Notes: generated by a model from the letters alone, not told the origin. Counted from the first letter of the stretch, positions 32,301-54,316 are shown. The stretch is DNA of 64,000 nt from Macrostomum lignano (GCA_002269645.1 NIVC01000040.1:310001-374000), one strand, 5' to 3'. Numbers and translations: made by a program.

Positions 32301-32670
32301 CATCAGCTATGCTCCCAGACATCAGCTATGCTCAGAGACACACATCAGCTATGCTCAGAGACACACATCAGCTATGCTCAGAGACATCAGCTATGCTCAG
32401 AGACCGACAGCAGCTATGCTCAGAGACATCAGCTATGCTCAGAGACACACATCAGCTATGCTCAGAGACATCAGCTATGCTCAGAGACACACATCAGCTA
32501 TGCTCAGAGACAGACACCAGCTTTGCTCAGAGACAGACATCAGCTATGCTCAGAGACACACATCAGCTATGCTCAGAGACAGACACCAGCTATGCTCAGA
32601 GACAGACACCAGCTATGCTCAGAGACACACATCAGCTATGCTCAGAGACACACATCAGCTATGCTCAGAG
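23378..32670. repeat. 9.3-kb modular satellite: core CAGCTATGCTCAGAGA plus short variable linkers (19/23/22-bp units), with higher-order duplications
   Basis: Direct. Identical ORFs recur at offsets of 1674 bp (24996/26670) and 2299 bp (28441/30740). Confidence 0.97.
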
Positions 32671-35779: not shown

Positions 35780-36390
35780 AGACAGACATCAGTTATGCTC
35801 AGAGACATCAGCTATGCTCAGAGACACATCAGCTATGCTCAGAGACAGACACCAGCTATGCTCAGAGACACACATCAGTTATGCTCAGAGACACACATCA
35901 GCTATGCTCAGAGACAGCATCAGCTATGCTCAGAGACATCAGCTATGCTCAGAGACAGACACCAGCTATGCTCAGAGACATCTATGCTCAGAGACCGACA
36001 GCAGCTATGCTCAGAGACATCAGCTATGCTCAGAGACCGACAGCAGCTATGCTCAGAGACAGACAGCAGCTATGCTCAGAGACCGACAGCAGCTATGCTC
36101 AGAGACCGACATCAGCTATGCTCAGAGACATCAGCTATGCTCAGAGACCGACAGCAGCTATGCTCAGAGACCGACAGTAGCTATGCTCAGAGACCGACAG
36201 CAGCTATGCTCAGAGACGTCAGCTATGCTCAGAGACCGACAGCAGCTATGCTCAGAGACAGACAGCAGCTATGCTCAGAGACAACAGCTATGCTCACAGA
36301 CACACATCAGCTATGCTCACAGACATCAGCTATGCTCAGAGACATCAGCTATGCTCAGAGACCGACAGCAGCTATGCTCAGAGACATCAG
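35780..36390. repeat. Continuation of the CAGCTATGCTCAGAGA satellite beyond the transposon
   Basis: Same core and orientation. Confidence 0.95.
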
Positions 36391-36885
36391 CCACACTCTA
36401 CAGGTGTACATTTTTGTCTGCCAAAGCAGCTCCTCATAGTTTTTTGAGCGAGTAGATTTTCCGTCTTAGTTTGAGTCCTGCGTTTTTCAAATGTTTGTTC
36501 ATCAAAATCACAACGGATCAGAAAGACAGCGATGACGGCCTTTCAATCAGGACTGCTTTTATTCCTCGCGTGTGGAACTACCTACTAAAAATATCAATCT
36601 TCGATCCCTTCGGAAAATATTACTTTGTGCTAATCTCTTCGGTCTCTCAATTCGAAAGTATTGCAATAGCTTCATAATAATCCTTTTATATCCTTAAGCC
36701 ATTCTAAAATCACGCGCTCGCGGGACAAATGAAAATATCGAATAAAGATTAAAAAATGAAACGACTGATGATGCAGGAATAATTCAATTCTTTCACTCGA
36801 GATGACTGCATGTACTTTTGCCATGACTGAGTCGATTAATTTCAATTCCTTAACTAGCTTTCGAGCGTATAAACAGATTGTGTGC

Positions 36886-37410: not shown

Positions 37411-37954
37411 ATACATTTACTAAAGCAGTTTATGATGCATGTATGTAAATCATTATAGGACGCAAAGAAAGTCGTGAAACCAGCGGTACATGTATTTATT
37501 GACGCTAGTCCTTAAACCCGGTCGGACGATTCAACCAATAGAAACAAAACAACGAGCGTGTATATATCAAAATAGTCGGAAAAATAATTACAATGATTAG
37601 CAATTTTAAGTAAGCGAGATCAACAGAGCGGGCAAGCGGCTCTAGGCTTCATTATAAATAAGCCACACATGCAAAGCGGGAGGAAGAGGCAGGCTCAGAG
37701 CCAGCCCCAGCGGCACCAACCCCTCAGCAGCCAATCACAGTGCAGAGCCCGAGAATCAGATGGCAAGACAATTAATCGAACGCATGTGCGAGTAAGGAGA
37801 GTCAGGCAAGTAGGAGACGAGACGCATGGGCGCAACTTTCAGCAAGCGGTAAAATTGAATGTAAAATGGAATATTCTGGTTTGTGTTTTTTTTAAAAACA
37901 TGGAATGATTTTGTTTAATCGCATTGCGAATAAGCACAGAAAAAAGGAAGGATA

Positions 37955-38015
37955 GAAAGACAGACGGACAGACACTAAGGCACCAGACAGACTGAGACAG
38001 ACATACAGACAGAAC

Positions 38016-38077
<62 letters not shown>

Positions 38078-38078
38078 C

Positions 38079-38113
<35 letters not shown>

Positions 38114-38255
38114 CAGACAGACAGACAGACATATGGACAGACGGACAGACAGACAAATAGACAGACAGACACTAAGGCACTAAGCCAGACAGACAGACAG
38201 ACAGACACTAAGGCACTAAGCCAGACAGACAGACAGACAGACAGACAGAGATAGG
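37955..38255. repeat. (GACA)n microsatellite
   Basis: Direct. Confidence 0.9.
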
Positions 38256-38303: not shown

Positions 38304-38789
38304 TCAAACAGTAGTAGTTTTCCAACGCTTCTTGCAAGCCTGACAACTCGCATAGCGCCGTCTTCTCAGAAAGGCGGGGCTCGTAAGTACAATGTAGAAA
38401 ACCGCAAGGCCAGTGGAGCAGCCTAAAACGCATGCAGCAATTCTATATGGTCGAATGGCCTCGCTACAGTCATTCTGGACAGCGCCTGCGCTAGGGTTGG
38501 CTGTAGACTCAACGACACTACTAGCAGCGGCAGTAGTAGCTGCGGATTCGACAGCCGCTTTAGATTGTTCCCAGAAATCTGAGCAAGCGGACTTAATTAA
38601 TGGCCTGTCGCACCTGGCTGCCCAGGCTCTGCCAAAGTCGCCGCGGCAGTGGGATAGACTTGGACAGTCCTTGCAATTGTTGGCTCCTTCGCTGTCGCGA
38701 TACTGGCCAGGGGGACAGGCAGGCAGGGGAACCGCCAGCATGGGCAGCACCAGCGACAATGTTATTAAAAGTGCCAACTGCAGCTGCAT
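38304..38789 (-). CDS. TNFR-like single-CRD type I membrane protein, paralog A (161 aa)
   Basis: Signal peptide; CPPGQY-x8-C-x2-CP-x4-C-x11-C-x8-C; S/T/A-rich stalk; hydrophobic segment IAACVLGCSTGLAVFYIVLTSPAFL; RRRR stop-transfer. Confidence 0.82.
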   Translation of the reverse strand: MQLQLALLITLSLVLPMLAVPLPACPPGQYRDSEGANNCKDCPSLSHCRGDFGRAWAARCDRPLIKSACSDFWEQSKAAVESAATTAAASSVVESTANPSAGAVQNDCSEAIRPYRIAACVLGCSTGLAVFYIVLTSPAFLRRRRYASCQACKKRWKTTTV

Positions 38790-38879
38790 AAAGGTTGGTG
38801 TGACATAAATTTGATGCAGACTGTCTATGAATGCTTTTTCCTGTGTCTGTTTGTCATAGTTTCCGCATTAGTATCTGCC

Positions 38880-38906
38880 AGTCTGTCTGCCCACCTGCCT
38901 TGTGTG

Positions 38907-38963
<57 letters not shown>

Positions 38964-39013
38964 TTGTGTCTGTCTGTCTGTCTGTCTGTCTGCCTTTGTG
39001 TCCGTCTGTCTGT

Positions 39014-39047
<34 letters not shown>

Positions 39048-39262
39048 TGCGTCTGTCTGTCTGTCTGTCTGTCTTTGTGTCTTTGTGTCTGTCTGTCTGT
39101 CTGTGTGTCTGTCTGTCTGTCTATGAATGCTTGTTTCCAGTGTCTCTGTCAGTCAGTCAGTCAGTCAGTCAGTCAGTGTCTACCTGTCTGTATGTCTGCC
39201 TGTCTGTCTGTCTGTCGGTGACTGTCTGTCTGTCTCTGTCTGACTGTGTGTCCGTCTGTCTA
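38880..39262. repeat. (TCTG)n microsatellite upstream of paralog A
   Basis: Direct; paralog C has the same arrangement. Confidence 0.9.
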
Positions 39263-39694
39263 CTTGGTTGGCCATCTCCTATCACATAATATTTCAAAGG
39301 ATACTTAGAATATACCTTCTATAGGCATAGAAAAACCAATAACAAAAAATATTAATCTGTCATCAGAGAAGTTTTATTTCAACGATTAGGACTTGTCACA
39401 GACATCTTGTTCGAGAATATAAATAAATAAACAAATCAATTTAAAGGTGTCAGGAAGAATTTTGGCATTCAGGTTTTCTGCAATTATCAGTTAAAATTAT
39501 GGAATCACATGCTGCGTGTAAGTCGCAGATAAACTTTGTGAAATTTGACAAAGGTAAAAATCCGAATGGCAAGGAATTATACTACTGTATAAATTTAGCT
39601 ATACTACTGCATTGAATAATTATGTCACAAAAATGGTAGAGGCACTTGTTTTAGAAAGACCGGAAGGAGAATCCTAAAAATATAGGAGCCAGGC

Positions 39695-40325
39695 GCTCAT
39701 TTTGGCGCCGCAGACACTCATTTTGGCGCCGCAGCCAGGCTCTCATTTTGGCGCCGCAGCCAGGCTCTCATTTTGGCGCCGCAGCCAGGCTCTCATTTTG
39801 GCGCCGCAGCCAGGCTCTCATTTTGGCGCCGCAGCCAGGCTCTCATTTTGGCGCCGCAGCCAGGCTCTCATTTTGGCGCCGCAGCCAGGCTCTCATTTTG
39901 GCGCCGCAGCCAGGCTCTCATTTTGGCGCTGCAGCCAGGCTCTCATTTTGGCGCCGCAGCCAGGCTCTCATTTTGGCGCCGCAGCCAGGCTCTCATTTTG
40001 GCGCCGCAGCCAGGCTCTCATTTTGGCGCCGCAGCCAGGCTCTCATTTTGGCGCCGCAGCCAGGCTCTCATTTTGGCGCTGCAGCCAGGCTCTCATTTTG
40101 GCGCTGCAGCCAGGCTCTCATTTTGGCACCGCAGCCAGGCTCTCATTTTGGCACCGCAGCCAGGCTCTCATTTTGGCGCCGCAGACACTCATTTTGGCGC
40201 CGCGGCAAGGCACTTTATTTTGGCGCCGCAGCCAGCCACTCATTTTGGCGCCGCAGCCAGGCTCTCATTTTGGCGCCGCAGACACTCATTTTGGCGCCGC
40301 GGCAAGGCACTATATTTTGGCGCCC
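39695..40325. repeat. 25-bp minisatellite (GCAGCCAGGCTCTCATTTTGGCGCC)
   Basis: About 25 near-perfect copies. Confidence 0.95.
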
Positions 40326-40632
40326 TGAAGTAAAATGATTGATTTCGATAACAGTTCAAAAAGTGGGACTGCCCATTCCGCTGACTCCTAAGCACACACA
40401 ACCGCGCCAATATAGTTATGCCCCTAAGCGAGAACGTTACATAATCAAAAAATAAATTATAAAATACAATTATCAAATTGTCAGTAGCTGTTTAAGTCGA
40501 GCAGAATCGGTGATCAGAAGCAATCCACGATAAACTGACCAGGCCAATCCGATCCATATATTGATTTTCAATTCGTTTTATGGCGCTGAAATTTTATTCA
40601 GGGTAGGTGGGCAACGCTGTTCTGCAGTGAGA

Positions 40633-43600
40633 CTCACACCCTATGATTAACCATAATAGGAGATCCCACACCCTATGATTAACCATAATAGGAGATCCCA
40701 CACCCTATGATTAACCATAATAGGAGATCCCACACCCTATGATTAACCATAATAGGAGATCCCACACCCTATGATTAACCATAATAAGAGATCCCACACC
40801 CTATGATTAACCATAATAAGAGATCCCACACCCTGTGATTAACCATAATAGGAGATCCCACACCCTGTGATTAACCATAATAGGAGATCCCACACCCTAT
40901 GATTAACCATAATAGGAGATCCCACACCCTATGATTAACCATAATAAGAGATCCCACACCCTATGATTAACCATAATAGGAGATCCCACACCCTGTGATT
41001 AACCACAATAGGAGATCCCACACCCTGTGATTAACCATAATAGGAGATCCCACATCCTGTGATTAACCATAATAGGAGATCCCACACCCTGTGATTAACC
41101 ACAATAGGAGATCCCACACCCTGTGATTAACCATAATAGGAGATCCCACACCCTGTGATTAACCATAATAGGAGATCCCACACCCTATGATTAACCATAA
41201 TAGGAGATCCCACACCCTATGATTAACCATAATAAGAGATCCCACACCCTATGATTAACCATAATAGGAGATCCTACACCCTGTGATTAACCATAATAGG
41301 AGATCCCACACCTTGTGATTAACCATAATAGGAGATCCCACACCCTGTGATTAACCATAATAAGAGATCCCACACCTTGTAATTAACCATAATAGGAGAT
41401 CCCACACCCTATGATTAACCATAATAGGAGATCCCACACCCTATGATTAACCATAATAGGAGATCCCACACCCTATGATTAACCATAATAAGAGATCCCA
41501 CACCCTATGATTAACCATAATAGGAGATCCCACACCCTATGATTAACCATAATAGGAGATCCCACACCCTATGATTAACCATAATAGGAGATCCCACACC
41601 CTATGATTAACCATAATAGGAGATCCCACACCCTATGATTAACCATAATAGGAGATCCCACACCCTGTGATTAACCACAATAGGAGATCCCACACCCTAT
41701 GATTAACCACAATAGGAGATCCCACACCCTGTGATTAACCATAATAAGAGATCCCACACCCTATGATTAACCATAATAGGAGATCCCACACCCTGTGATT
41801 AACCACAATAGGAGATCCCACACCCTGTGATTAACCATAATAGGAGATCCCACACCCTATGATTAACCATAATAGGAGATCCCACACCCTGTGATTAACC
41901 ACAATAGGAGATCCCACACCCTGTGATTAACCATAATAGGAGATCCCACACCCTGTGATTAACCATAATAAGAGATCCCACACCCTGTGATTTACCACAA
42001 TAGGAGATCCCACACCCTGTGATTAACCATAATAGGAGATCCCACACCCTATGATTAACCATAATAGGAGATCCCACACCCTATGATTAACCATAATAAG
42101 AGATCCCACACCCTATGATTAACCATAATAGGAGATCCCACACCCTATGATTAACCATAATAAGAGATCCCACACCCTATGATTAACCATAATAGGAGAT
42201 CCCACACCCTATGATTAACCATAATAGGAGATCCCACACCCTATGATTAACCATAATAGGAGATCCCACACCCTATGATTAACCATAATAGGAGATCCCA
42301 CACCCTATGATTAACCATAATAGGAGATCCCACACCCTATGATTAACCATAATAAGAGATCCCACACCCTATGATTAACCATAATAAGAGATCCCACACC
42401 CTGTGATTAACCATAAAAGGAGATCCCACACCCTATGATTAACCATAATAGGAGATCCCACACCCTATGATTAACCATAATAGGAGATCCCACACCCTGT
42501 GATTAACCACAATAGGAGATCCCACACCCTGTGATTAACCATAATAGGAGATCCCACACCCTGTGATTAACCATAATAGGAGATCCTACACCCTGTGATT
42601 AACCACAATAGGAGATCCCACACCCTGTGATTAACCATAATAGGAGATCCCACACCCTGTGATTAACCATAATAGGAGATCCCACACCCTGTGATTAACC
42701 ATAAAAGGAGATCCCACACCCTATGATTAACCATAATAGGAGATCCCACACCCTGTGATTAACCATAATAGGAGATCCCACACCCTGTGATTAACCATAA
42801 TAGGAGATCCCACACCCTGTGATTAACCATAATAGGAGATCCCACATCCTGTGATTAACCATAATAGGAGATCCCACACCCTGTGATTAACCACAATAGG
42901 AGATCCCACACCCTGTGATTAACCATAATAGGAGATCCCACACCCTGTGATTAACCATAATAGGAGATCCCACACCCTATGATTAACCATAATAGGAGAT
43001 CCCACACCCTATGATTAACCATAATAAGAGATCCCACACCCTATGATTAACCATAATAGGAGATCCCACACCCTGTGATTAACCATAATAGGAGATCCCA
43101 CACCTTGTGATTAACCATAATAGGAGATCCCACACCCTGTGATTAACCATAATAAGAGATCCCACACCTTGTAATTAACCATAATAGGAGATCCCACACC
43201 CTATGATTAACCATAATAGGAGATCCCACACCCTATGATTAACCATAATAGGAGATCCCACACCCTATGATTAACCATAATAAGAGATCCCACACCCTAT
43301 GATTAACCATAATAGGAGATCCCACACCCTATGATTAACCATAATAGGAGATCCCACACCCTATGATTAACCATAATAGGAGATCCCACACCCTATGATT
43401 AACCATAATAGGAGATCCCACACCCTATGATTAACCATAATAGGAGATCCCACACCCTGTGATTAACCACAATAGGAGATCCCACACCCTATGATTAACC
43501 ACAATAGGAGATCCCACACCCTGTGATTAACCATAATAAGAGATCCCACACCCTATGATTAACCATAATAGGAGATCCCACACCCTGTGATTAACCACAA

Positions 43601-44980
43601 TAGGAGATCCCACACCCTGTGATTAACCATAATAGGAGATCCCACACCCTATGATTAACCATAATAGGAGATCCCACACCCTGTGATTAACCACAATAGG
43701 AGATCCCACACCCTGTGATTAACCATAATAGGAGATCCCACACCCTGTGATTAACCATAATAAGAGATCCCACACCCTGTGATTTACCACAATAGGAGAT
43801 CCCACACCCTGTGATTAACCATAATAGGAGATCCCACACCCTATGATTAACCATAATAGGAGATCCCACACCCTATGATTAACCATAATAAGAGATCCCA
43901 CACCCTATGATTAACCACAATAGGAGATCCCACACCCTATGATTAACCATAATAAGAGATCCCACACCCTATGATTAACCATAATAGGAGATCCCACACC
44001 CTATGATTAACCATAATAGGAGATCCCACACCCTATGATTAACCATAATAGGAGATCCCACACCCTATGATTAACCATAATAGGAGATCCCACACCCTAT
44101 GATTAACCATAATAGGAGATCCCACACCCTATGATTAACCATAATAAGAGATCCCACACCCTATGATTAACCATAATAAGAGATCCCACACCCTGTGATT
44201 AACCATAAAAGGAGATCCCACACCCTATGATTAACCATAATAGGAGATCCCACACCCTATGATTAACCATAATAGGAGATCCCACACCCTGTGATTAACC
44301 ACAATAGGAGATCCCACACCCTGTGATTAACCATAATAGGAGATCCCACACCCTGTGATTAACCATAATAGGAGATCCTACACCCTGTGATTAACCACAA
44401 TAGGAGATCCCACACCCTGTGATTAACCATAATAGGAGATCCCACACCCTGTGATTAACCATAATAGGAGATCCCACACCCTGTGATTAACCATAAAAGG
44501 AGATCCCACACCCTATGATTAACCATAATAGGAGATCCCACACCCTATGATTAACCATAATAGGAGATCCCACACCCTGTGATTAACCACAATAGGAGAT
44601 CCCACACCCTGTGATTAACCATAATAGGAGATCCCACACCCTGTGATTAACCATAATAGGAGATCCTACACCCTGTGATTAACCATAATAGGAGATCCCA
44701 CACCCTGTGATTAACCACAATAGGAGATCCCACACCCTGTGATTAACCACAATAGGAGATCCCACACCCTGTGATTAACCATAATAGGAGATCCCACACC
44801 CTGTGATTAACCACAATAGGAGATCCCACACCCTGTGATTAACCATAATAAGAGATCCCACACCCTGTGATTAACCATAATAGGAGATCCCACACCCTAT
44901 GATTAACCACAATAGGAGATCCCACACCCTATGATTAACCACAATAGGAGATCCTACACCATAAAAGGAGATCCCACACC
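40633..44980. repeat. 32-bp satellite, ~4.3 kb (GGAGATCCCACACCCTATGATTAACCATAATA), with a 1792-bp higher-order repeat
   Basis: 32-bp period; identical ORFs at 41895 and 43687 (offset 56 x 32). Confidence 0.97.
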
Positions 44981-45178
44981 TGGAGGCATACCTTAAACCT
45001 GAGAATGTCACTAAACAAACGTTTTCAACCACATGTATAAGAGGCTTTCAAGGCAGTTTTAATCCAATACAAATATCAACCGACCTTGCCTCGCTTACGA
45101 TGACGAGCGCCACCATTTTTACCAGAATTTGGTGTCTGCCGCATAAGCAGCCCATTCTTGTCGTCATGTCTGCCATTT

Positions 45179-45568
45179 TCAAAATTTCTCGTAGTTTTCG
45201 GTCTGTTTTCGGGTTCTGGCTATGCCAATCTGACATTGTAGAACATGTTCGCAGTTACAATCATAGGTAGCACTTGTGTTCATATCAGAGACACTGTTGA
45301 AATTATAAGACGATGAAGTTGTCTCAGCATCTTGAGTTTTCTCCCAGTATTCCTGACAGCCAGATTTAATAATCTCTTGCTCACATTGAGCTCGCCAAAA
45401 TTTATCTGTGCCGATGCACTGCTGCCAAGTTGGGCACTTATCGCATTTACCAGTCGCCTCTTTGTTATGATAGGTGCCCATTGGGCAGTTGATTGACGGC
45501 AGCGCGACCGTGAGACATACCACTCCTGTCAAGACTATAAATGACTGGATAATTTTAATCGACGACAT
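45179..45568 (-). CDS. TNFR-like single-CRD protein, paralog B (129 aa), with no transmembrane segment
   Basis: ttcag|ATG start (MSSIKIIQSFIVLTGVVCLTVA); CPMGTY-x8-C-x2-CP-x4-C-x9-C-x8-C; S/T stalk; ends hydrophilic. Confidence 0.72.
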   Translation of the reverse strand: MSSIKIIQSFIVLTGVVCLTVALPSINCPMGTYHNKEATGKCDKCPTWQQCIGTDKFWRAQCEQEIIKSGCQEYWEKTQDAETTSSSYNFNSVSDMNTSATYDCNCEHVLQCQIGIARTRKQTENYEKF

Positions 45569-45614
45569 CTGAAATTTTTGCATGATTGGTAAAAGTAACT
45601 GAAAATTATGAGGG

Positions 45615-46385
45615 TATAGATTAGCAATTCATTCTATTCTGTTTTGTAACTAAGGGAATAGATTAGCAATCCATTCTATTCTGTTTTGTAACTAAGGGAA
45701 TAGATTAGCAATTCATTCTATTCTGTTTTGTAACTAAGGGAATAGATTAGCAATTCATTCTATTCTGTTTTGTAACTAAGGGAATAGATTAGCAATTCAT
45801 TCTATTCTGTTTTGTAACTAAGGGAATAGATTAGCAATCCATTCTATTCTGTTTTGTAACTAAGGGAATAGATTAGCAATTCATTCTATTCTGTTTTGTA
45901 ACTAAGGGAATAGATTAGCAATCCATTCTATTCTGTTTTGTAACTAAGGGAATAGATTAGCAATCCATTCTATTCTGTTTTGTGACTAAGGGAATAGATT
46001 AGCAATCCATTCTATTCTGTTTTGTGACTAAGGGAATAGATTAGCAATTCATTCTATTCTGTTTTGTAACTAAGGGAATAGATTAGCAATCCATTCTATT
46101 CTGTTTTGTGTTTAAGGGAATAGATTAGCAATCCATTCTATTCTGTTTTGTAACTAAGGGAATAGATTAGCAATCCATTCTATTCTGTTTTGTAACTAAG
46201 GGAATAGATTAGCAATCCATTCTATTCTGTTTTGTGTTTAAGGGAATAGATTTGCAATCCATTCTATTCTGTTTTGTAACTAAGGGAATAGATTAGCAAT
46301 CCATTCTATTCTGTTTTGTAACTAAGGGAATAGATTAGCAATCCATTCTATTCTGTTTTGTGTTTAAGGGAATAGATTAGCAATC
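45615..46385. repeat. 42-bp minisatellite (GGGAATAGATTAGCAATCCATTCTATTCTGTTTTGTAACTAA)
   Basis: About 18 copies just upstream of the paralog B acceptor. Confidence 0.95.
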
Positions 46386-47191
46386 CACTTTATGAAAACG
46401 TTTTTTATTATCGCTAAATGTGATAAAAGCGCTATCTTTCTAATCGTAATATCAAAAACAAGTTGGAACTTATCAAGAGTTGTAAAGCCTAGTTATTTAA
46501 AACAAACACACAATTGCAAAAAAAGCTAAAATGAGTAATTATGTGTAGAACACAGTTTTGTAAGAAAGACAGCTGTCTACCTTTAGCTGGATAACACAAA
46601 TTGTTGATGTGCAAGCAATATTGAAACAAGGACTACTCAAGTAACATGTATATATATACTTAAGGTTGTCCTTGGTATTAAAAGCTACTAAAAATACTAA
46701 AAAATAAATATAAGATTAAATGAGCGCAAAAGAAGTGCCAATAAGACGCAAAAATGCCTCATGGAATGCATTGTGTATACGAATATGTTGGTTCCAATGA
46801 GTCAAAAACAATCAGAGAAACAACAATGCTATATATTAGTCACGCATAAAAACATCCGTGAAAAATAATTACAGAAATTCTACAATTAAAAAAACATTTC
46901 CTTTACTAGCAGTGACAAAAATATCAGAAAAATTCAAGCAATAGCCATAATACTAGTAGTGAAACTAGCGGAAAATTGCAAGCACGGAATCCATAATTGC
47001 AAAAAACAATTATAAATATATACTAGGATACAAAAGTTAAATAATGAGTATTAAGTTGAGTTAATATTAAGCAATTGATAAAATGTTTGGCAGTCGCAAT
47101 CAAAGTCAGTTAGATGGAGATTAATCCCCATCATTATAGACAGCATCTTCGGCATCTGTGGGTCCAGTGGGTCCAGTCGGGTTGTCATCCG

Positions 47192-47653
47192 TCAGCAGCT
47201 GGATACAGAGTTTTCGCCTCTAATAACACAGGCTACCACGACAATAACGATCAAGCAGACCAATAAAATGACGAATAAAATCCAGACAATTGGCCAAGGA
47301 TCTACTTTGCCAGCCGCACCTTCATTTGATCGTTTAGTGGTAGCATTGAATGCGTTAGAACAATTGCTCACAGCAACGCCACTGGTGTCAAAGCCGTTAC
47401 CTGGCACATTCTCAGCGGAATTAGGCGGCTGATTAATAATTTCCCAAAATTGCGAGCAAGCCAATTTAATCGACTGCCACTCGCACCTGGCTGCCCAGGC
47501 TTCGTCAGAGCGGCACTGTGAAAGGCTCGGACAGAGCCGGCAATCGTTGGCTCCAGGGTGGCGATATTTGCCAGTCGGACAGGCAGACAGGAGATCTGCC
47601 GGCATGGGCAGCACCAGAATAAATATAGCGAGCAACGGCATTGCCTTTAGCAT
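47192..47653 (-). CDS. TNFR-like single-CRD type I membrane protein, paralog C (153 aa)
   Basis: ttcag|ATG; signal peptide; CPTGKY-x7-C-x2-CP-x4-C-x9-C-x8-C; strong TM IVWILFVILLVCLIVIVVVACVI. Confidence 0.85.
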   Translation of the reverse strand: MLKAMPLLAIFILVLPMPADLLSACPTGKYRHPGANDCRLCPSLSQCRSDEAWAARCEWQSIKLACSQFWEIINQPPNSAENVPGNGFDTSGVAVSNCSNAFNATTKRSNEGAAGKVDPWPIVWILFVILLVCLIVIVVVACVIRGENSVSSC

Positions 47654-47694
47654 CTGAAATTTGATGAAGAGTGTCTATAAATGCTTGTTTCATG

Positions 47695-47787
47695 TATCTG
47701 TCTGTCTGTCTGTGTTTCTGTTTGTCTGTCTGTGTTTCTGTTTGTCTGTCTGTCTATCTGTCTGTCTGTATGTCTGTCTGTGTTTCG

Positions 47788-47859
<72 letters not shown>

Positions 47860-47870
47860 GCCTGTGTGTG

Positions 47871-47937
<67 letters not shown>

Positions 47938-47960
47938 TTGTCTGTGTGTCTGTCTGTCGG
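47695..47960. repeat. (TCTG)n microsatellite in the putative 5'UTR intron of paralog C
   Basis: Lies between the acceptor at 47654 and a candidate donor AG|GTACGT near 48020. Confidence 0.9.
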
Positions 47961-48593
47961 TCTGCCCTTCTTCGCGCACCCTGATAGATATACTTGTTCA
48001 TTATCACAGAAAACGTACCTATCTAGGAAGTTTATTTAATCTTTAAAGTGCTTAACTTAATAATAACACTATACGAACACAATAGGAACACAATGCGATT
48101 AAAACTCATTACCCAATTTCTAGATTTTGAAACTGAATTGTTGCAATAACTAGTCAAATAACTAATCGACTAAGCTATTCTATAAGCTTTTTTGTATAGA
48201 AAAAAATAAGGACACAATAAAACATGATTCCAAAAAATAAAATGACAAGTACGTGTACTTTAGAATTTCGGAATAAATATGAATAACAGCCTTCGATTTT
48301 GGTACAAGTGGAGATTTTGAAGATTGTTTGTTAAAAAGATTGTTTTAGCAAGCGTGGCGAATTGTAATGCAAAAATTCTATTTTATTAAACCGGTAAAAA
48401 CAGATTAGAACAAAAAATATCTATTTACCAAATATATAACTGTATAAAAGTTGTTATTTCAAAAAGTTATGTTAAAAAATTGTATTGGGACACCAGAAAA
48501 TAATTCTGATTTAAGGTCCAACCCATGCTGTTGGTAGCACAATAGGTTTCTCATGGTTGCAAAGTTATACAATATTATTCAATAAATTTACAG

Positions 48594-49523
48594 TTACAAC
48601 GCAGTTGTCAGGATGTCTTCCTTAGAATACGGTTGTTCTTTAATCTTAGATGACTCATAGCCGACATTCGTTTGATTATCATCAGACGGCATCAAATTTT
48701 CTAGCTCATTGCGTGTCAACTCACTATTTGAGGATGGACTTCTCTTACGGTTTCCAGCGGAACGCTGCGGTTTGTTGGTAGACAGACTTGAAGCCTGTTT
48801 CAGTTGCTGTTGAAACTTCTGCTTTTGTTTATTGTTCTTTGACCATTTGTAGAAGAAGGCGAGGAAAGAAATTAGGATGAGCATCAGAAGGATCGTCATT
48901 AGTACGCCCAAACCAATTTTTATCTTTTCGTAGACCGGAAAGGTAAAACCCGCAGGCTTATCAGTAGAACCAGCGGGTTTATCAGTAGAACCAGCGGGTT
49001 TATCAGTAGAACCAGCAGGTCTATCAGTAGAACCAGCCGGTCTATCAGTAGAACCAGCCGGTCTATCAGTAGAACCAGCCCGTCTATCAGTAGAACCAGC
49101 CCGTCTATCAGTAGAACCAGCCGGTCTATCAGTAGAACCAGCCGGTCTATCAGTAGAACCAGCCGGTCTATCAGTAGAACCAGCCGGTCTATCAGTAGAA
49201 CCAGGCATTTCTGTCGTGGATTGGATAGCAGCCTGTTTAGTTGGTTCAACAGAGGCGTCGCTGGTGCCAGCCATCCGCGGCTGCAGCTCATCCAAGGAGA
49301 ACTTGCAGTATTCACGGACATGGCTCCGTCTGCACTCGTGCCCTACAGTGGGATTGCTGCGGCACCGGTCAAGGCTAGGACAGCGCTTGCAGTCATGGGT
49401 GCTCATGTCAGGGTATTCGCCTGGCTGACACTTTGGAGGCCAATTGCCCATGGTTCTGGCATCAGGGTTGACGGACAACCATAACAGTACAATCACAGCC
49501 AGAGAAAGCAAAATTGCCTTCAT
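48594..49523 (-). CDS. TNFR-like single-CRD type I membrane protein, paralog D (309 aa), with a 12 x GSTD(R/K)(P/R)A stalk
   Basis: MKAILLSLAVIVLLWLSV signal; CQPGEY-x7-C-x2-CP-x4-C-x9-C-x8-C; 21-bp coding repeat; TM IGLGVLMTILLMLILISFLAFFY; ~85-aa tail; AATAAA at 48387-48382. Confidence 0.87.
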   Translation of the reverse strand: MKAILLSLAVIVLLWLSVNPDARTMGNWPPKCQPGEYPDMSTHDCKRCPSLDRCRSNPTVGHECRRSHVREYCKFSLDELQPRMAGTSDASVEPTKQAAIQSTTEMPGSTDRPAGSTDRPAGSTDRPAGSTDRPAGSTDRRAGSTDRRAGSTDRPAGSTDRPAGSTDRPAGSTDKPAGSTDKPAGSTDKPAGFTFPVYEKIKIGLGVLMTILLMLILISFLAFFYKWSKNNKQKQKFQQQLKQASSLSTNKPQRSAGNRKRSPSSNSELTRNELENLMPSDDNQTNVGYESSKIKEQPYSKEDILTTAL

Positions 49524-49779
49524 ATTTGTTTGTTTGCTAAAAAATAAAAGAAATGCTTTCATTAGTTTGAAGTGATGTTTCTTGGAAAAATTCCTAAAAG
49601 CTTTACGCAAAATACACTGGCTATAGAAATTCCTTTTCTTTCAGCAAAATTAGCAGCACTTTCTAATTGTTTCACTTTCAGGTATGACTTGCCTGTCTTA
49701 TTGTCACTAAAACCTATTTTGCTAACCAATTACTAGCAATAGTAAAAATCGTGTGCATTTTTACCTGCACAATGAGAAT

Positions 49780-50545
49780 CATCCTCCGATGAGATCTCAC
49801 ACCATAAGAATCATTCTCCGGTGAGATCCCACATCATGTGAATCATCCTCTAATGAGATTTCACACCATGAGAATCATCTACCGAAGAGATCTCACACCA
49901 TGAGAATCAGCATTCAATGAGATCTCACACCATGAAGATCAGCATCCGATGAGATCTCACACCATGAGAATCAGCATCCGATGAGATCTCACACCATGAG
50001 AATCAGCATTCAATGAGATCTCACACCATGAGAATCAGCATCCAATGAGATCTCACACCATGAGAATCATCCACCGATGAGATCTCACACCATGAGAATC
50101 AGCATTCAATGAGATCTCACACCATGAGAATCAGCATTCAATGAGATCTCACACCATGAGAATCAGCATCCAATGAGATCTCACACCATGAGAATCATCT
50201 ACCGAAGAGATCTCACACCATGAGAATCAGCATTCAATGAGATCTCACACCATGAGAATCAGCATCCAATGAGATCTCACACCATGAGAATCATCTACCG
50301 AAGAGATCTCACACCATGAGAATCAGCATTCAATGAGATCTCACACCATGAGAATCAGCATCCAATGAGATCTCACACCATGAGAATCATCTACCGATGA
50401 GATCTCACAACATGAGAATCAGCATCCAATGAGATCTCACACCATGAGAATCAGCATCCAATGAGATCTCACACCATGAGAATCAGCATTCAATGAGATC
50501 TCACACCATGAGAATCAGCATTCAATGAGATCTCACACCATGAGA
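49780..50545. repeat. 32-bp minisatellite (GAGATCTCACACCATGAGAATCAGCATTCAAT)
   Basis: About 23 copies. Confidence 0.93.
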
Positions 50546-50888
50546 TCCTACATCCGGATTTTAATCCTACCAGGAGATCCCTTAGATAACTTATCCTTAT
50601 AAGAGGCCGTTTAACCGCGAGTCCTACAGCTTCCTGCACTGAAGATTTCACTAATTCTAATAGCTATTTTAAAACTCACAAGGGCCAATCGCATTGAATA
50701 AAAAACGCATAAATATTCAGACTACGAATGATAAATATATAGATCATAGATATATTTCTACCTTTGTACAGACATTTTACTCAGGAGCAACACACATTAG
50801 GTCGTTTGCTATTGAAAAGGAGGCACACGAACAACAGTTCAGATGAAAAAATTAATTGTAATTTTGTGTAGGGCAGAGCAGGTACTCA

Positions 50889-51177
50889 GAAAATATACTC
50901 AGCATCATCGGAAAGTCGCCATCACAGAAGATTCCGTCTGGGGTCGCCACTTTTGAGAGTGCAGGTAAAGTCTCTCAATCTTTGCGAGTGACGCAACTTT
51001 AGCTACGCCGCGGCAGACTTGAGTTGAGGAATGGAGTGGGGGAGCGGTGTGCGAGGGTTGGACGGATTAAAGCTACCCCGATCAGTTTTCTCGTACCTTT
51101 TATTGTAGAACAGTCCAAGAGAAACTGCTCACTGGAGCATAGAGTGGCGACTTTTCAATGTTGCTGAGTATATTTTC
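50889..51177. mobile_element. Possible MITE-like element with 33-bp imperfect inverted repeats
   Basis: GAAAATATACTCAGCATCATCGGAAAGTCGCCA versus the reverse complement of TGGCGACTTTTCAATGTTGCTGAGTATATTTTC; no clear TSD. Confidence 0.45.
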
Positions 51178-51933
51178 AGGAATAAAAAAGACATGCTACT
51201 TACGAGATAGATTAATTGATTGATTGATGATAATTGAGTGCAATGACGCACTCATGCACACGCTTACACAGGGTGTACAGCGGCCATGTGACTTTCTAAT
51301 CGTCAGGCATGTCTTGGGGGTTGGCCCTGATGAGTGTGTATCGCCAGACTACATGTACCCCTCCCCCCCCCCGGACTAATGTTTACTGCACAAGCCACTT
51401 TAGAGCTTGCAGCGACCAGTCAAGTGTTAACAGGGACATGGGGGGAGGGGAGACACCGCGTTGAATGGAAAGCATGCCTCAGCCCCACCACCCCACAGCC
51501 CTACCTATCGATCGACAGCCAATCCGGGTGCTAGAGAGAGGGATAGATAGGGAAACACGACAGAGGACCAGTATGCCAGCCAATCAGGACGCAATAAAAA
51601 ACAATAGCATACAGCAAAGAGATGATAAAACCGGAGCTTATAAACGATGAATTTGCTATGATACCAATAGTATGAAACAGGCTAAATTAGCACTTCCAGA
51701 GAATTCGGAGATGAAATGCGTTACGCATAGCAGAAATGGCATGATACACGGGGGGGGGGTGGCTGCAGGGGTGCTAAAATACATCACTACGGAGTTCGAG
51801 GCTACCAACTAAAATGTTTATTTAAAATACAGAGAAAATGTGCGGAACACTAAACAGTTTATAAAAACTTTTCTGCGGTCATTATTACATTAATGCTAAG
51901 TAAGAGTTAAAGAAAAGTGAAATATATCCGCAA

Positions 51934-52600
51934 TCATCCAGCAGGCTCGCCATCAGCTGCAGAAGGCAATCGATCTAGTATTTCATTTAGAGACTGATGT
52001 TCTTCGACAACTGACATTTGAGGATCTGCCATCAGCGACTGCTCTTGCGCCGCGAGTTCAACTTGTTCTGATGGAGAATCAATCCCGTTAATAGCGTTGG
52101 TTGTGCTGACCACCGAATCCTTGTCAGATTCGACTGTAGTAGAGTGCTTTGATTTACGGGCTCGAACATGTACATGATAGATTGTGAAGACTACAAGCAA
52201 AACAAACATAAGTCCAAGGCAGCTTGAAAGCGTCGCGATGATGCTACGAAGCTTGTGGATTTCATCATGAAGCTGCTCAATTTTACTTTCAGACGCTGAA
52301 CTTGACTCAGTTGTCGATGGAGTGCCACACGGAGGACATGCCGCACGTGTCGGCCCGGGACAGGTGCTTTGGCCAGAAAGATTTTCTGGCTTCCTGTTGG
52401 TTGTCACAGCGTCAGGACTGGCGGTGGTTGGCATGTTCTGCCAAGTGGAACAGTTGGGAAGAAGACACACGCCTTGATCCCAAAGTTGTTTGCACTTCGA
52501 GCCCCAATATTTCTCCATCAATCGGTGCGCCTGACTACAATCGTAGCACATACGTGGACAGGCTCTCTTCTGCCGAGTGCTTTCGTCCCAGTACGTAGGG
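51934..52600 (-). CDS. TNFR-like CRD membrane protein, paralog E; 5' end (signal peptide and first Cys) not found
   Basis: The frame reads PTYWDESTRQKRACPRMCYDCSQAHRLMEKYWGSKCKQLWDQGVC..., T/S/P stalk, TM IIATLSSCLGLMFVLLVVFTIY, ~70-aa tail. There is an in-frame TAA just upstream. AATAAA at 51822-51817. Confidence 0.65.
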
Positions 52601-54316
52601 AAAAATTAACATAGAATCCTAATTTTCTGAACGGAAAGCTTTATAAATATCGATAGAGCAATAAAAAAGGCACAACATATCAAAAGATCAACACTGGATC
52701 TGCCTCCTATCAAAAGTTATAGCAATTTTTGTGCTGAAAAATGAAAATTTCCTATCTCCGTAGTGTATTTTTTTCGGGAAAAAGTGCCTTCAAAACTTTT
52801 CTAAGAAACGAGGTTTCCCGTCCTTCTACTTAAGTCGTCCTTGGTGTGTGCATTGTTTTATTAATTAACTATATTGATTGCCATAGACAAAGTTTCCTGC
52901 AGTTTGGCCATAGATTATTAATTGCCATACGGTACAGTCGCATTATTTACATGTAGGATTCACAGGGCGCGTCTCAGGCTTCAACGCATTGCGGCAGTGA
53001 TCAGGCGTGACCTTTGAGGCGTATATATCGCGTTGTATACTTCAACACGATTGATTATTGAGCAACATGTACATGTATAATTGCATATTTAGATCAACTT
53101 TCATTTTGGCAACCGGAATTTCGACATTGGATGCCAAATACTGTAGGGATCCCAAGTTTCTTCATACTGGAAAAGTAATTAGTTGAAGTTCATATTTATT
53201 AGCTGTAACTTCCGCCAGAGGCTCATCAGCGAAAAGGTAGAGTAGAGACGCGTACGCGTTGGTATTTTATTTGACTTTAAACATTTTCAGATGCTTAAAA
53301 ATTTGATTTGATTACGTTTACGATTTGAACCCAGGATGTCAAATGTCACTGCGCAATTCTGAACTTAAAAATTTTGGGCTGAAGTTAAACATACTTGATG
53401 TAACCGCCCTTGTCGCCTGTCCGCTCCTATTGAGAGACGAACGCTTGGCTAGAGGGGGCGATGACCGTAGGCTGCCTATGACCGGGCAATGACCTGACGG
53501 ACCTCCAGCACCAGACTGTCCCGCCCACATGATTAGTAGCTTTGGTAGCGCTTCGTGACCAGAGGGCCAAGGACCCACATGGACCCCACCTGTAGCCAAG
53601 GTGCAATAGTTGGCTGCCACCACTCTATGTGACCTGGCGCACCTGGATCTTTCTACCAGACCTCTCGAGGCTAGAGCCCCGCCTGGATTGGTTACCAGGG
53701 GATTTAGGCTAACAGGGGAGACGCATGCAGCCGAGTACAGGGACTCTGCTTGGGGCATGATCGGGAACTCTGGGCTCAATCCTGGAGGATTTCTCAGCAG
53801 GGGATCCTTAGTGGCTGTGAGCGAGGCTGGCTTGCGACTTTGATTACTAAGAGTAGTATGAGGCGAACATGTACTGTCTCTAGTTTAGATTGCTCAGGGC
53901 GAAGGGACGCGTTAGCATGGGGTTGCAACCTTCCTACTGCCATTCTGTGCCAAGACTCGCTAATCCCTCTACTGCACGCACACGCGGCCCCGCAGCACGC
54001 ACTCACAGGCGGGCTTTGCACGGGGAGAGGCCATTAGCTTACCCAAACTTCCTTATGCTTTGCCACCCCGGGAGAAAGGCTTAGCAAGCCATGAGTTAAA
54101 TGATGGTGAAAGATTGAATAATGATGAAGTTAGTTAATAGTTAATAATTAGGCCCTTAGGCGAATAATCAGGCGATTAGGCGACTTCACTATTGAGTAAA
54201 ATACAGCAAAAGATACGGTATCACAATTGGCTCAGCTCTCTAATCAGACAATGGAAAATAGGCAAACCCCGGATAAGCAAAGGCAATTAGAGCACAAATT
54301 AGTAACAGGAACTTAC

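What the first reader, a model, noticed from the sequence alone, without database searches (positions are those of the whole stretch)
38304..52600. Tandem cluster of five highly diverged single-CRD TNF-receptor-like genes
Seen: five same-strand ORFs (A-E), each with one coding exon. A-D share a signal peptide and one six-Cys domain C-x2-G-x-Y-x7/8-C-x2-CP-x4-C-x9/11-C-x8-C, followed by an S/T-rich stalk. E has a related Cys domain. Stalks, TM segments and tails differ greatly, and A and C also share upstream non-coding sequence (aaatttgatg.aga.tgtctat.aatgctt plus (TCTG)n), showing local duplication. Established: this spacing is close to the TNFR cysteine-rich domain, and BCMA, BAFF-R, Fn14 and Drosophila Grindelwald are TNFR-family receptors with one CRD and no death domain. 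Inference: a lineage-specific, rapidly diversifying receptor/decoy array, possibly for TNF-like ligand sensing, immunity, wound signalling or allorecognition. This is the best candidate for an undescribed system here.
Basis: partly seen in the sequence, partly recalled or inferred. Interest (0 to 1): 0.82.

Follow-up and report, generated by a model that had tools for sequence, protein, structure and literature searches.

The report
Flatworm-specific TNFR-like small receptor gene array
This stretch of the flatworm Macrostomum lignano genome carries a tandem array of small, lineage-specific cell-surface protein genes whose single cysteine-rich domain is conserved by selection and partly resembles TNF-receptor modules, but true TNF-receptor membership and any ligand remain unproven.

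Summary
The window is Macrostomum lignano (Mlig_3_7, NIVC01000040.1:300001-364000). Window B has lost its TM through a 68-nt frameshifting deletion. E is a 5'-truncated copy (no signal peptide) of a divergent E/F subtype whose domain is only weakly similar (E 0.01-0.04).

Two further M. lignano loci carry intact copies. Several copies are RNA-seq-annotated genes. Between duplicated loci the Cys domain has dN/dS 0.16 (p=0.0009), while the rest of each protein drifts at about 0.96. No indel interrupts about 2 kb of CDS.

An exhaustive profile search finds full-domain relatives only in M. lignano. Outside it, only the first half (CPxGxY...CxxCP) matches, to Ephrin_rec_like/TNFR-like repeats. Pfam TNFR_c6 and Ephrin_rec_like hits stay below or at threshold. 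AF2 models (pLDDT 75-78) give a β-hairpin plus three helices. Almost all Foldseek hits are TNFR-type CRDs (4-1BB, BCMA, DR5, Fn14, ELAPOR1), but none is significant (E≥2). Tails lack a death domain and TRAF motifs.

Verdict: a real, lineage-specific, birth-and-death family of TNFR-like small surface proteins. TNFRSF membership is not shown. Moderate interest.

The parts
38304..38789 (-). Gene A: 161-aa type I membrane protein. Signal-like aa 5-23, six-Cys domain C25-C69 (38583-38717), TM about aa 117-135, 26-aa basic tail. It is the only member annotated in this window (P0002; the L001 copy is PAA86028.1, Mlig009270.g1).
45179..45583 (-). Gene B: 134-aa ORF with signal and six-Cys domain (C33-C76) but no TM. 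A 68-nt deletion (junction at 45217/45216) relative to the intact 191-aa L001 copy removes the TM and shifts the frame. It is either a pseudogene or a secreted form.
47192..47653 (-). Gene C: 153-aa type I membrane protein. Domain C25-C66, TM about aa 125-143, 10-aa tail. TTTCAG (a match to the trans-splice acceptor motif) lies directly before the ATG.
48594..49523 (-). Gene D: 309-aa type I membrane protein. Domain C32-C73, stalk built of a 21-nt / 7-aa (STDRPAG) tandem repeat at 48959-49204, TM about aa 205-223, 86-aa tail.
51934..52605 (-). Gene E: open frame of 223 codons (first ATG at 52551) of the divergent E/F subtype. It has a Cys-rich N-terminal region, a CPPC stalk, a TM and an 83-aa tail, but no signal peptide. 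It is 5'-truncated relative to E3 in L003, is not annotated, and has no database homologue.
38807..38841 (-). Conserved upstream block of A (GGAAAAAGCATTCATAGACAGTCTGCATCAAATTT), shared with C.
47657..47691 (-). Conserved upstream block of C (TGAAACAAGCATTTATAGACACTCTTCATCAAATTT), shared with A.
38903..39261 (.). (TGTC)n microsatellite upstream of A. Its counterpart upstream of C lies at 47697-47964.
47697..47964 (.). (TCTG)n microsatellite upstream of C.
40635..44960 (.). 32-bp satellite, 135 copies, between A and B. It is distantly related (about 64%) to the 32-bp satellite upstream of D.
45611..46387 (.). 42-bp satellite directly upstream of B.
49768..50545 (.). 32-bp satellite upstream of D. 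It is also found upstream of D and D' in L001 and L003.

Best explanation
A-D and their copies at two other M. lignano loci are genuine, expressed, single-exon genes of a family so far seen only in Macrostomum. Each encodes a small type I membrane glycoprotein. A signal peptide is followed by one six-Cys domain of about 45-50 residues, then a variable and partly repetitive S/T/P-rich stalk, a TM helix and a short, unconserved tail.

The domain consists of a TNFR/Ephrin_rec_like-type disulfide-braced β-hairpin (C-P-x-G-x-Y ... C-x-x-C-P) followed by a three-helix half. That helical half has no detectable relative.

Shown here: the domain alone is under purifying selection, and the remainder evolves at about the neutral rate. 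The array evolves by birth and death. This includes tandem and segmental duplication between satellite arrays, module swapping between neighbours (A' = A domain + B stalk; B' and E3 share a C-type stalk/TM/tail), copy-number change of the stalk repeat, and loss events (window B lost its TM, window E lost its signal peptide).

Inferred: the domain is an extracellular binding module held out on a stalk. The tails are 5-26 aa in A, A' and C and lack a death domain or TRAF motifs. The proteins therefore most likely act as non-signalling binders, co-receptors or decoys for an extracellular ligand rather than as autonomous signalling receptors. The hairpin loop, which is the most variable part of the domain among paralogues, would set specificity. 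The ligand is unknown. A TNF/Eiger-type ligand is one possibility and is treated as a rival.
For: Organism and copies:
- Window A equals an annotated M. lignano protein.
- Syntenic copies occur in L001 (A-D intact) and in L003 (F, E3, A', B', D', D).

Expression:
- The Mlig_3_7 annotation is built only from RNA-seq (PMC5730564).
- It contains A, A', B', D' and D copies.

Constraint between window and L001:
- There are no gap openings in about 1990 nt of CDS, against about 29 in about 2500 nt of flanks. Substitution identity is similar in both.
- Pooled NG86 gives ω=0.16 in the Cys domain (6 nonsynonymous vs 9 synonymous changes; p=0.0009) and ω=0.96 elsewhere.
- All six Cys plus G, Y and P are invariant in 8 sequences.

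Architecture.

Fold:
- Two AF2 models (pLDDT 75.1 and 77.8) give the same hairpin plus three-helix topology.
- Foldseek hit lists are dominated by TNFR-type CRDs.
- Pfam Ephrin_rec_like and TNFR_c6 hits recur across members.
- The profile retrieves Ephrin_rec_like/TNFR_ELAPOR1/TNFR_c6 repeat proteins through positions 3-23.

Restriction: full-domain hits among 1.84 billion representatives are all M. lignano.

Mosaicism. Loss events.
Against: - No single similarity to a TNFR-type domain is statistically significant. Foldseek E is 2 or higher, TNFR_c6 is far below its cut-off, and Ephrin_rec_like is at best marginal and covers only half of its profile.
- The AF2 models rest on an 8-sequence alignment, and the disulfide pairing could not be read.
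- Window B, C, D and E are not annotated, so expression of these particular copies is unproven.
- The dN/dS result rests on 15 substitutions in the domain. Gene conversion between copies could distort it.
- Nothing tested here shows binding of any ligand. The 'binder without signalling' role is inferred from tail length alone.
- D and E have 83-86-aa tails that could signal.
Confidence: 0.55

Rival explanations
1. One reading: the proteins are bona fide single-CRD members of the TNF-receptor superfamily (BCMA/TACI/Fn14/Grindelwald-like). They bind the endogenous trimeric TNF/Eiger-like ligands of M. lignano as receptors or decoys.
For: - The Cys order and first-half spacing are like the solved single-CRD receptors. 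C-x12-14-C-x2-C with an aromatic residue about 5 after C1 is seen in the PDB-verified BCMA, TACI and Fn14 sequences.
- Foldseek hits include the BCMA ECD (TM 0.51 normalised to BCMA), Fn14, 4-1BB and DR5.
- TNFR_c6 gives sub-threshold hits in 4 of 14 members.
- M. lignano has several TNF ligands (4 in the genome plus 6 reconstructed; 6 Eiger homologues) but only one canonical NGFR-like TNFR was reported by PMC7519573.
- The type I topology fits.
Against: - All similarity scores are non-significant.
- There are no hits to the BCMA, TACI, BAFF-R or Fn14 Pfam families at E up to 10.
- C3-C4 and C5-C6 spacings (5 and 8) differ from BCMA, TACI and Fn14 (2-3 and 2-3).
- There is no DxL-type motif in the hairpin.
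- A-D tails have no death domain and no TRAF motif.
- The best sequence relatives are Ephrin_rec_like repeats, which are not TNF binders.
- A preprint already counts 16 Wgn-like and 1 Grnd-like receptors in M. lignano, so the ligands are not necessarily orphans.
Confidence: 0.2
2. The resemblance to TNFR modules is only convergent, reflecting a generic disulfide-braced hairpin. The family would be an unrelated, taxon-restricted set of mucin-like surface or secreted glycoproteins with another role, such as epithelial coat, adhesion, gamete or partner recognition, or microbe binding. Its rapid turnover would be typical of such genes.
For: - Full-domain homologues occur only in M. lignano.
- The helical second half has no match anywhere.
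- Stalks are S/T/P-rich and repeat-based with variable copy number.
- Evolution outside the domain is near-neutral or fast.
- Tails are very short.
- Gene turnover and mosaicism are high.
Against: - Sub-threshold hits to TNFR-type families recur by three independent methods: Pfam HMMs, the reverse profile search and Foldseek. This is more than expected for pure convergence.
- No expression-site data support any particular alternative role.
Confidence: 0.2
3. The ORFs are non-functional relics: decaying duplicates or fortuitous ORFs in a satellite-rich region.
For: - Window B (TM deletion plus frameshift) and window E (no signal peptide) are damaged.
- B, C, D and E are not annotated in this window.
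- Per-gene dN/dS is high for C and D.
- P0003 looks like a decayed C-B chimera.
Against: - A, C and D are intact in two or three diverged loci with no indel in the CDS, although flanks carry about one per 100 nt.
- The domain has ω=0.16, p=0.0009.
- All Cys are conserved.
- Several copies have RNA-seq-derived gene models.
Confidence: 0.05

Closest known systems
Ephrin_rec_like (PF07699) and related TNFR-like Cys-rich repeats (TNFR_ELAPOR1_6th PF23091, NCD3G PF07562)
   Same: The first half of the domain (C-P-x-G-x-Y-x7/8-C-x2-C-P) matches profile positions 12-34 of Ephrin_rec_like in 7 of 14 members (best E 6e-5). The family profile retrieves multi-repeat Ephrin_rec_like/TNFR_ELAPOR1/NCD3G proteins with whole-protein E down to 4e-18. 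ELAPOR1 is the top Foldseek hit for model B.
   Different: There is a single copy per protein instead of tandem repeats. Only half of the profile is matched, and scores are at or below the gathering cut-off. The C-terminal half is helical with two further Cys and has no counterpart. The proteins are tiny, stalked type I proteins.
Single-CRD TNF receptors: BCMA (TNFRSF17), TACI CRD2, Fn14 (TNFRSF12A), Drosophila Grindelwald
   Same: Both are small membrane proteins with one six-Cys ectodomain and no death domain. Both have a hairpin followed by helical elements. The C1-aromatic-C2-x2-C3 spacing is the same. BCMA ECD and Fn14 appear among the Foldseek hits.
   Different: No significant sequence or structure score was obtained (hhalign P about 0.1; Foldseek E 2.5-5.8). 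C3-C4 and C5-C6 loops are longer. There is no DxL ligand-binding motif and no TRAF-binding motif in A-D tails. Here a cleavable signal peptide and a long stalk are present. Ligand binding is untested. Grindelwald itself was not compared.
Canonical platyhelminth TNFR (NGFR-like, described as structurally remarkably similar to NGFR, with a predicted death domain; PMC7519573)
   Same: It occurs in the same organism. Both are type I membrane proteins with a Cys-rich ectodomain.
   Different: That receptor is described as NGFR-like with recognisable TNFR cysteine-rich domains and a predicted death domain, and is conserved across flatworms. The present family has one non-canonical domain, no death domain, and is found only in M. 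lignano.

Membership tests
TNF receptor superfamily (TNFR_c6, PF00020) | Sequence match to the TNFR/NGFR cysteine-rich region profile above the curated cut-off | tested here: not met
   A scores E 0.053 and 14.4 bits against a cut-off of 29.4. Only 4 of 14 family members hit at all, with best E 0.0064.
TNF receptor superfamily, single-CRD subtypes (BCMA, TACI, BAFF-R, Fn14) | Sequence match to the subtype-specific families or proteins | tested here: not met
   No Pfam hit to these families appears at E up to 10 for the five window proteins or in the top-25 list for 14 members. hhalign of the family alignment against PDB-verified BCMA, Fn14 and TACI gives P = 0.12, 0.13 and 0.09. A profile search of PDB sequences finds no TNFR.
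TNF receptor superfamily | CRD fold superposable on solved TNFR CRDs | tested here: inconclusive
   AF2 models have pLDDT 75-78. About 26 of 28 Foldseek PDB hits are TNFR-type CRDs, but all have E 2.2-9.5 and probability 0.18 or lower. Most cover only 20-24 columns (the hairpin). For BCMA, TM is 0.38 normalised to the query and 0.51 normalised to BCMA.
TNF receptor superfamily | Six Cys forming 1-2, 3-5, 4-6 disulfides (A/B-type modules) | not testable with these tools
   Six invariant Cys are present in the right order.
TNF receptor superfamily | Membrane protein with extracellular N-terminal CRD | tested here: met
   A, C and D have a signal-like N-terminus, the domain, a stalk and a single TM. 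Window B lacks the TM and window E lacks the signal peptide.
TNF receptor superfamily | Cytoplasmic death domain or TRAF-binding motif | tested here: not met
   Tails are 26 aa (A), 10 aa (C) and 86 aa (D), with no [PSAT]x[QE]E or PxExx[Ar/Ac] motif and no Pfam domain. Only E has AAQE and PSEQVE, which are chance-level short motifs.
TNF receptor superfamily | Binds a trimeric TNF-family ligand | not testable with these tools
   No multimer prediction or experiment was available. M. lignano does have TNF ligands (PMC7519573; preprint).
Ephrin_rec_like (PF07699) | Profile match above the curated cut-off over the 48-position domain | tested here: inconclusive
   B scores 22.0 bits and A 19.4 bits against a cut-off of 23.1. 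The best member has E 6e-5. The match covers only profile positions 12-34 of 48. The reverse search retrieves Ephrin_rec_like repeat proteins.
Ephrin_rec_like (PF07699) | Occurs as tandem repeats in large extracellular proteins (as in the retrieved relatives) | tested here: not met
   There is one domain per protein of 134-309 aa, whereas the retrieved relatives have several matched stretches each (up to 10 in P0007).
Pacifastin inhibitor domain (UniRef name of P0003) | Match to the pacifastin domain profile | tested here: not met
   P0003 has no Pfam family at E up to 1. No pacifastin hit appears for the five window proteins at E up to 10.

The most novel reading that the evidence does not exclude
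The array is a previously unrecognised, Macrostomum-specific expansion of minimal single-CRD TNF-receptor-like proteins. They would act as decoys or co-receptors for the lineage-specific expansion of Eiger/TNF ligands in this regenerating flatworm, with specificity diversified by hairpin-loop variation and module shuffling. This would be an independent invention of a BCMA/Fn14/Grindelwald-style receptor tier in Platyhelminthes.
Probability: 0.15. Interest if true: 0.7.

Novelty: new variant of a known kind. Interest (0 to 1): 0.42.

Why it matters
If the TNFR-like reading is right, M. lignano would have a second, minimal tier of TNF-ligand binders. M. lignano is a transgenic regeneration and stem-cell model in which one canonical TNFR and several TNF ligands have been reported. 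That second tier would be relevant to wound, apoptosis and JNK signalling in regeneration.

Even without that, the locus is a clean example of birth-and-death evolution. A small, selectively constrained binding domain is combined with freely drifting and freely swapped stalk/TM/tail modules. The genes lie between satellite arrays in a recently duplicated genome. The family is currently labelled 'hypothetical protein', and one member carries an unsupported 'Pacifastin' name, so a correct description has annotation value.

Tried and rejected
- Pfam scans of the five window proteins and of 14 family members gave only sub-threshold Ephrin_rec_like and TNFR_c6 hits. Other hits (Stevor, PFF1_TM and similar) fall on TM or low-complexity segments and were discarded.
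- A profile search of PDB sequences found no TNFR. The WhiB3 and EndoIII matches come from CxxCP iron-sulfur motifs and are chance.
- hhalign against BCMA, Fn14 and TACI was not significant.
- Foldseek with two models gave no significant hit.
- A search for an upstream signal-peptide exon of E in 3.5 kb of three-frame translation found none. Alignment with E3 shows truncation instead.
- Word-indexed protein searches with the mixed alignment A8 and with E found nothing. The first such search found only P0001.
- Gene IDs Mlig009270, Mlig004480, Mlig028920 and Mlig011081 were not found in any paper text or in the supplements of PMC5816591, PMC12896417 and PMC5946080. No expression-site information was obtained.
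- TRAF-motif scans found nothing in A-D.
- The Pacifastin name of UniRef A0A1I8JGC1 is not supported.
- Overlapping antisense and microsatellite ORFs in the region (for example 38413-38808 +, 47661-48046 +) are repeat or antisense artefacts.

Full report
**Source and observation**

ORF A is identical, apart from its first two residues, to an annotated Macrostomum lignano protein. That protein lies on NIVC01000040.1 of assembly GCA_002269645.1 at 338304-338783. The window is therefore NIVC01000040.1:300001-364000 of this free-living flatworm.

The region is dominated by satellites and microsatellites. On the minus strand lie four ORFs:
- A: 38304-38789
- B: 45179-45583
- C: 47192-47653
- D: 48594-49523

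All four share C-x2-G-x-Y-x7/8-C-x2-C-P-x4-C-x9-11-C-x8-C, and nine columns are invariant. A six-frame scan of the whole window finds this motif only there.

A simple hydropathy scan gives each a signal-like N-terminus. It also gives A, C and D a single TM, with tails of 26, 10 and 86 residues. A and C share a block of about 35 nt just upstream of the ATG, preceded by the same microsatellite.

**Corrections to the observation**

Window B lacks a TM. Compared with its 191-aa counterpart in a second locus, a 68-nt deletion removes the TM and shifts the frame. Downstream the two sequences are almost identical.

E (51934-52605) has a TM and an 83-aa tail but no signal peptide. The intact E-type gene at a third locus (E3) has one. 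Homology between the two starts exactly at the PTYW codons, with unrelated DNA and an in-frame TAA upstream in the window.

E's Cys-rich region is only weakly similar to the A-D domain:
- hhalign gives E 0.034 and 0.011.
- BLASTP aligns 7 residues.
- The F-type domain of L003 gives E 0.043.

E is tied to the family mainly by position, by architecture, and because E3 carries a stalk/TM/tail module homologous to those of B' (61% over 244 aa) and C (47%).

**Related loci**

L001 (NIVC01000297.1) is syntenic. BLAST blocks are 89-92% identical, and substitution identity is 95-98%. It holds intact A, B, C and D.

L003 (NIVC01000298.1) holds, on one strand: F, E3, a FLYWCH-like ORF, A', B', D' and D. 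Its end overlaps the start of L001 at 93-95% identity. That haplotype or homeologue therefore carries a longer array (F-E3-A'-B'-D'-D-C-B-A), whereas in the window E is directly followed by D.

Copies are mosaics. A' joins an A-type domain to a B-type stalk. B' and E3 share a C-type stalk/TM/tail. The stalk repeat of D differs in unit sequence and number between copies.

**Are the genes real?**

The Mlig_3_7 annotation derives solely from RNA-seq assemblies (PMC5730564). It includes:
- A (both copies)
- A' and B' (Mlig004480.g5/g6; g2 on contig 297)
- D' (Mlig028920.g1/g2)
- D (Mlig011081.g1)

A' and B' are about 34% identical as proteins yet share one transcript prefix. This suggests, by inference, that they are cut from one transcriptional unit.

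The M. lignano spliced leader ends in ATG, and its acceptor motif is [T/C]TNCAG (PMC8629364). C has TTTCAG immediately before its ATG, and the annotated A protein starts right after ATGCAG. Both fit SL trans-splicing, but this is inference. Window B, C, D and E are not annotated.

**Selection**

Between window and L001, substitution identity is about the same in CDS (95.1-97.8%) and in flanks. However, there are no gap openings in about 1990 nt of CDS, against about 29 in about 2500 nt of flanks.

Per-gene NG86 ratios are noisy, ranging from 0.35 to 2.8. Pooling, after excluding the misaligned B tail and the D repeats, gives:

| Region | ω | Counts | Binomial p vs neutrality |
|---|---|---|---|
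| Cys domain | 0.16 | 6 nonsynonymous, 9 synonymous | 0.0009 |
| Rest of protein | 0.96 | 36 of 48 changes nonsynonymous | 0.74 |

The domain is thus constrained at the protein level, and the rest drifts. This rejects the 'neutrally decaying ORFs' alternative for A, C and D.

**What the domain is**

Pfam gives recurring but sub-threshold hits:
- Ephrin_rec_like: 7 of 14 members, best E 6e-5, profile positions 12-34 only.
- TNFR_c6: 4 of 14 members, best E 0.0064.
- No hits to the BCMA, TACI, BAFF-R or Fn14 families.

An exhaustive HMMER search of 1.84 billion representative proteins finds full-length domain matches only in M. lignano proteins (P0001, P0003-P0006). The remaining 50-odd hits match chiefly through profile positions 3-23. 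Six of the eight such hits I scanned are multi-repeat Ephrin_rec_like/TNFR_ELAPOR1/NCD3G/TNFR_c6 proteins.

PDB sequence search finds nothing relevant. hhalign against PDB-verified BCMA, Fn14 and TACI sequences is not significant. The Cys order and the C1-aromatic-C2-x2-C3 spacing do agree.

AF2 models of the A and B domains (8-sequence alignment; pLDDT 75.1 and 77.8) agree on a β-hairpin followed by three helices. Foldseek against the PDB gives:
- For A, only 4-1BB at E 8.8.
- For B, 28 hits at E 2.2-9.5, nearly all TNFR-type CRDs: ELAPOR1, the BCMA ectodomain (TM 0.51 normalised to BCMA), 4-1BB, DR5/TRAIL-R2, Fn14 and the mGluR5 Cys-rich domain.

No hit is individually significant, and most cover only the hairpin plus CxxCP (20-24 columns). 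Three independent methods nevertheless point to the same superfamily for the first half of the domain. The helical second half remains unmatched.

**Function**

Shown here:
- An extracellular, selectively constrained Cys domain on a drifting stalk.
- Very short tails in A, A' and C.
- No death domain and no TRAF motif in A-D.
- A birth-and-death, module-shuffling mode of evolution.

Inferred: the domain is a binding module, and most members act as non-signalling binders, co-receptors or decoys.

The TNF-ligand hypothesis is possible. PMC7519573 reports one canonical NGFR-like TNFR per flatworm and about ten TNF ligand sequences in M. lignano. A preprint counts 6 Eiger, 16 Wgn-like and 1 Grnd-like proteins. 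I could not test binding, and I could not see whether this family is among the preprint's homologues. I give the TNF-binding reading about 0.15-0.2.

**Novelty and score**

The family is annotated only as 'hypothetical protein'. One UniRef entry is named 'Pacifastin domain-containing', which Pfam does not support. I found no paper mentioning the gene IDs.

It is best described as a new, lineage-restricted variant built on a known kind of module, the TNFR/Ephrin_rec_like Cys-rich hairpin. It is not an established TNFRSF member. The finding is real but less striking than proposed: three intact genes plus two damaged ones in this window, with no significant TNFR match. Interest is about 0.4.

Noticed in passing
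window 45216-45217 (gene B): A 68-nt deletion relative to L001 B removes the TM helix and causes a frameshift. The sequence downstream still encodes, out of frame, the tail of the intact copy. This could be a pseudogene, a secreted variant or an assembly error.
   Followed up: yes
window 52551-52820 (5' of E) vs L003 3683-3900: Window E has lost the signal-peptide-coding part. Similarity to E3 begins abruptly at CCTACGTACTGG, which suggests a breakpoint or rearrangement there.
   Followed up: yes
L003 1464-2105 and 3683-4603: Two further unannotated family members (F3 of 213 aa; E3 of 306 aa) have a divergent Cys-rich domain (PTY...CP..C...W..C) and a CPPC stalk motif. Neither is in the protein collection.
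   Followed up: partly
L003 10010-16564 vs window 49524-51933: The L003 haplotype or homeologue carries an extra A'-B'-D' block between E3 and D. That block is absent from the window, so there is structural variation of the array between genome copies.
   Followed up: partly
L003 6578-7150: A 190-aa annotated ORF with a sub-threshold FLYWCH zinc-finger hit (E 9e-4) lies inside the array. It is possibly transposon-derived.
   Followed up: partly
P0003 (UniRef100_A0A1I8JGC1): An older gene model fuses a C-type domain fragment to a B-type signal peptide and domain in which C1 is replaced (NQLPNGPYHNK). It looks like a decayed fourth copy or a read-through chimera. Its UniRef name 'Pacifastin domain-containing protein' has no Pfam support.
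   Followed up: partly
window 48959-49204 (D stalk): A 21-nt repeat encodes STDRPAG about 12 times. The L001 copy has SAGRPVG units and fewer copies, and D' has TADKSAG about 17 times. This is a minisatellite-like, mucin-type stalk that changes between copies.
   Followed up: partly
window 23380-32670 and 36000-36391: A 9.3-kb array of a 19/23-bp satellite (ATCAGCTATGCTCAGAGAC[AGAC]) creates long spurious ORFs in all + frames. A short further block of the same satellite lies at 36.0-36.4 kb.
   Followed up: no
window 10207-12121: A 1.9-kb (AGGAG)n array has extreme GC and AT skew (0.96 and 0.92). It yields 700-aa pseudo-ORFs on both strands.
   Followed up: no
window 18353-18775 (-) and 21963-22460 (-); L001 14741-15202 and 19388-19789: Conserved hydrophobic exons of a neighbouring multi-exon gene look like a membrane transporter. 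They are present downstream of the array in both loci. There is no Pfam hit at E up to 1.
   Followed up: partly
window 37954-38249 and 38903-39261: The same tetranucleotide microsatellite flanks gene A on both sides in opposite orientation ((AGAC)n downstream, (TGTC)n upstream on the + strand). Every gene of the array is bracketed by tandem repeats, which are plausible substrates for unequal recombination.
   Followed up: no
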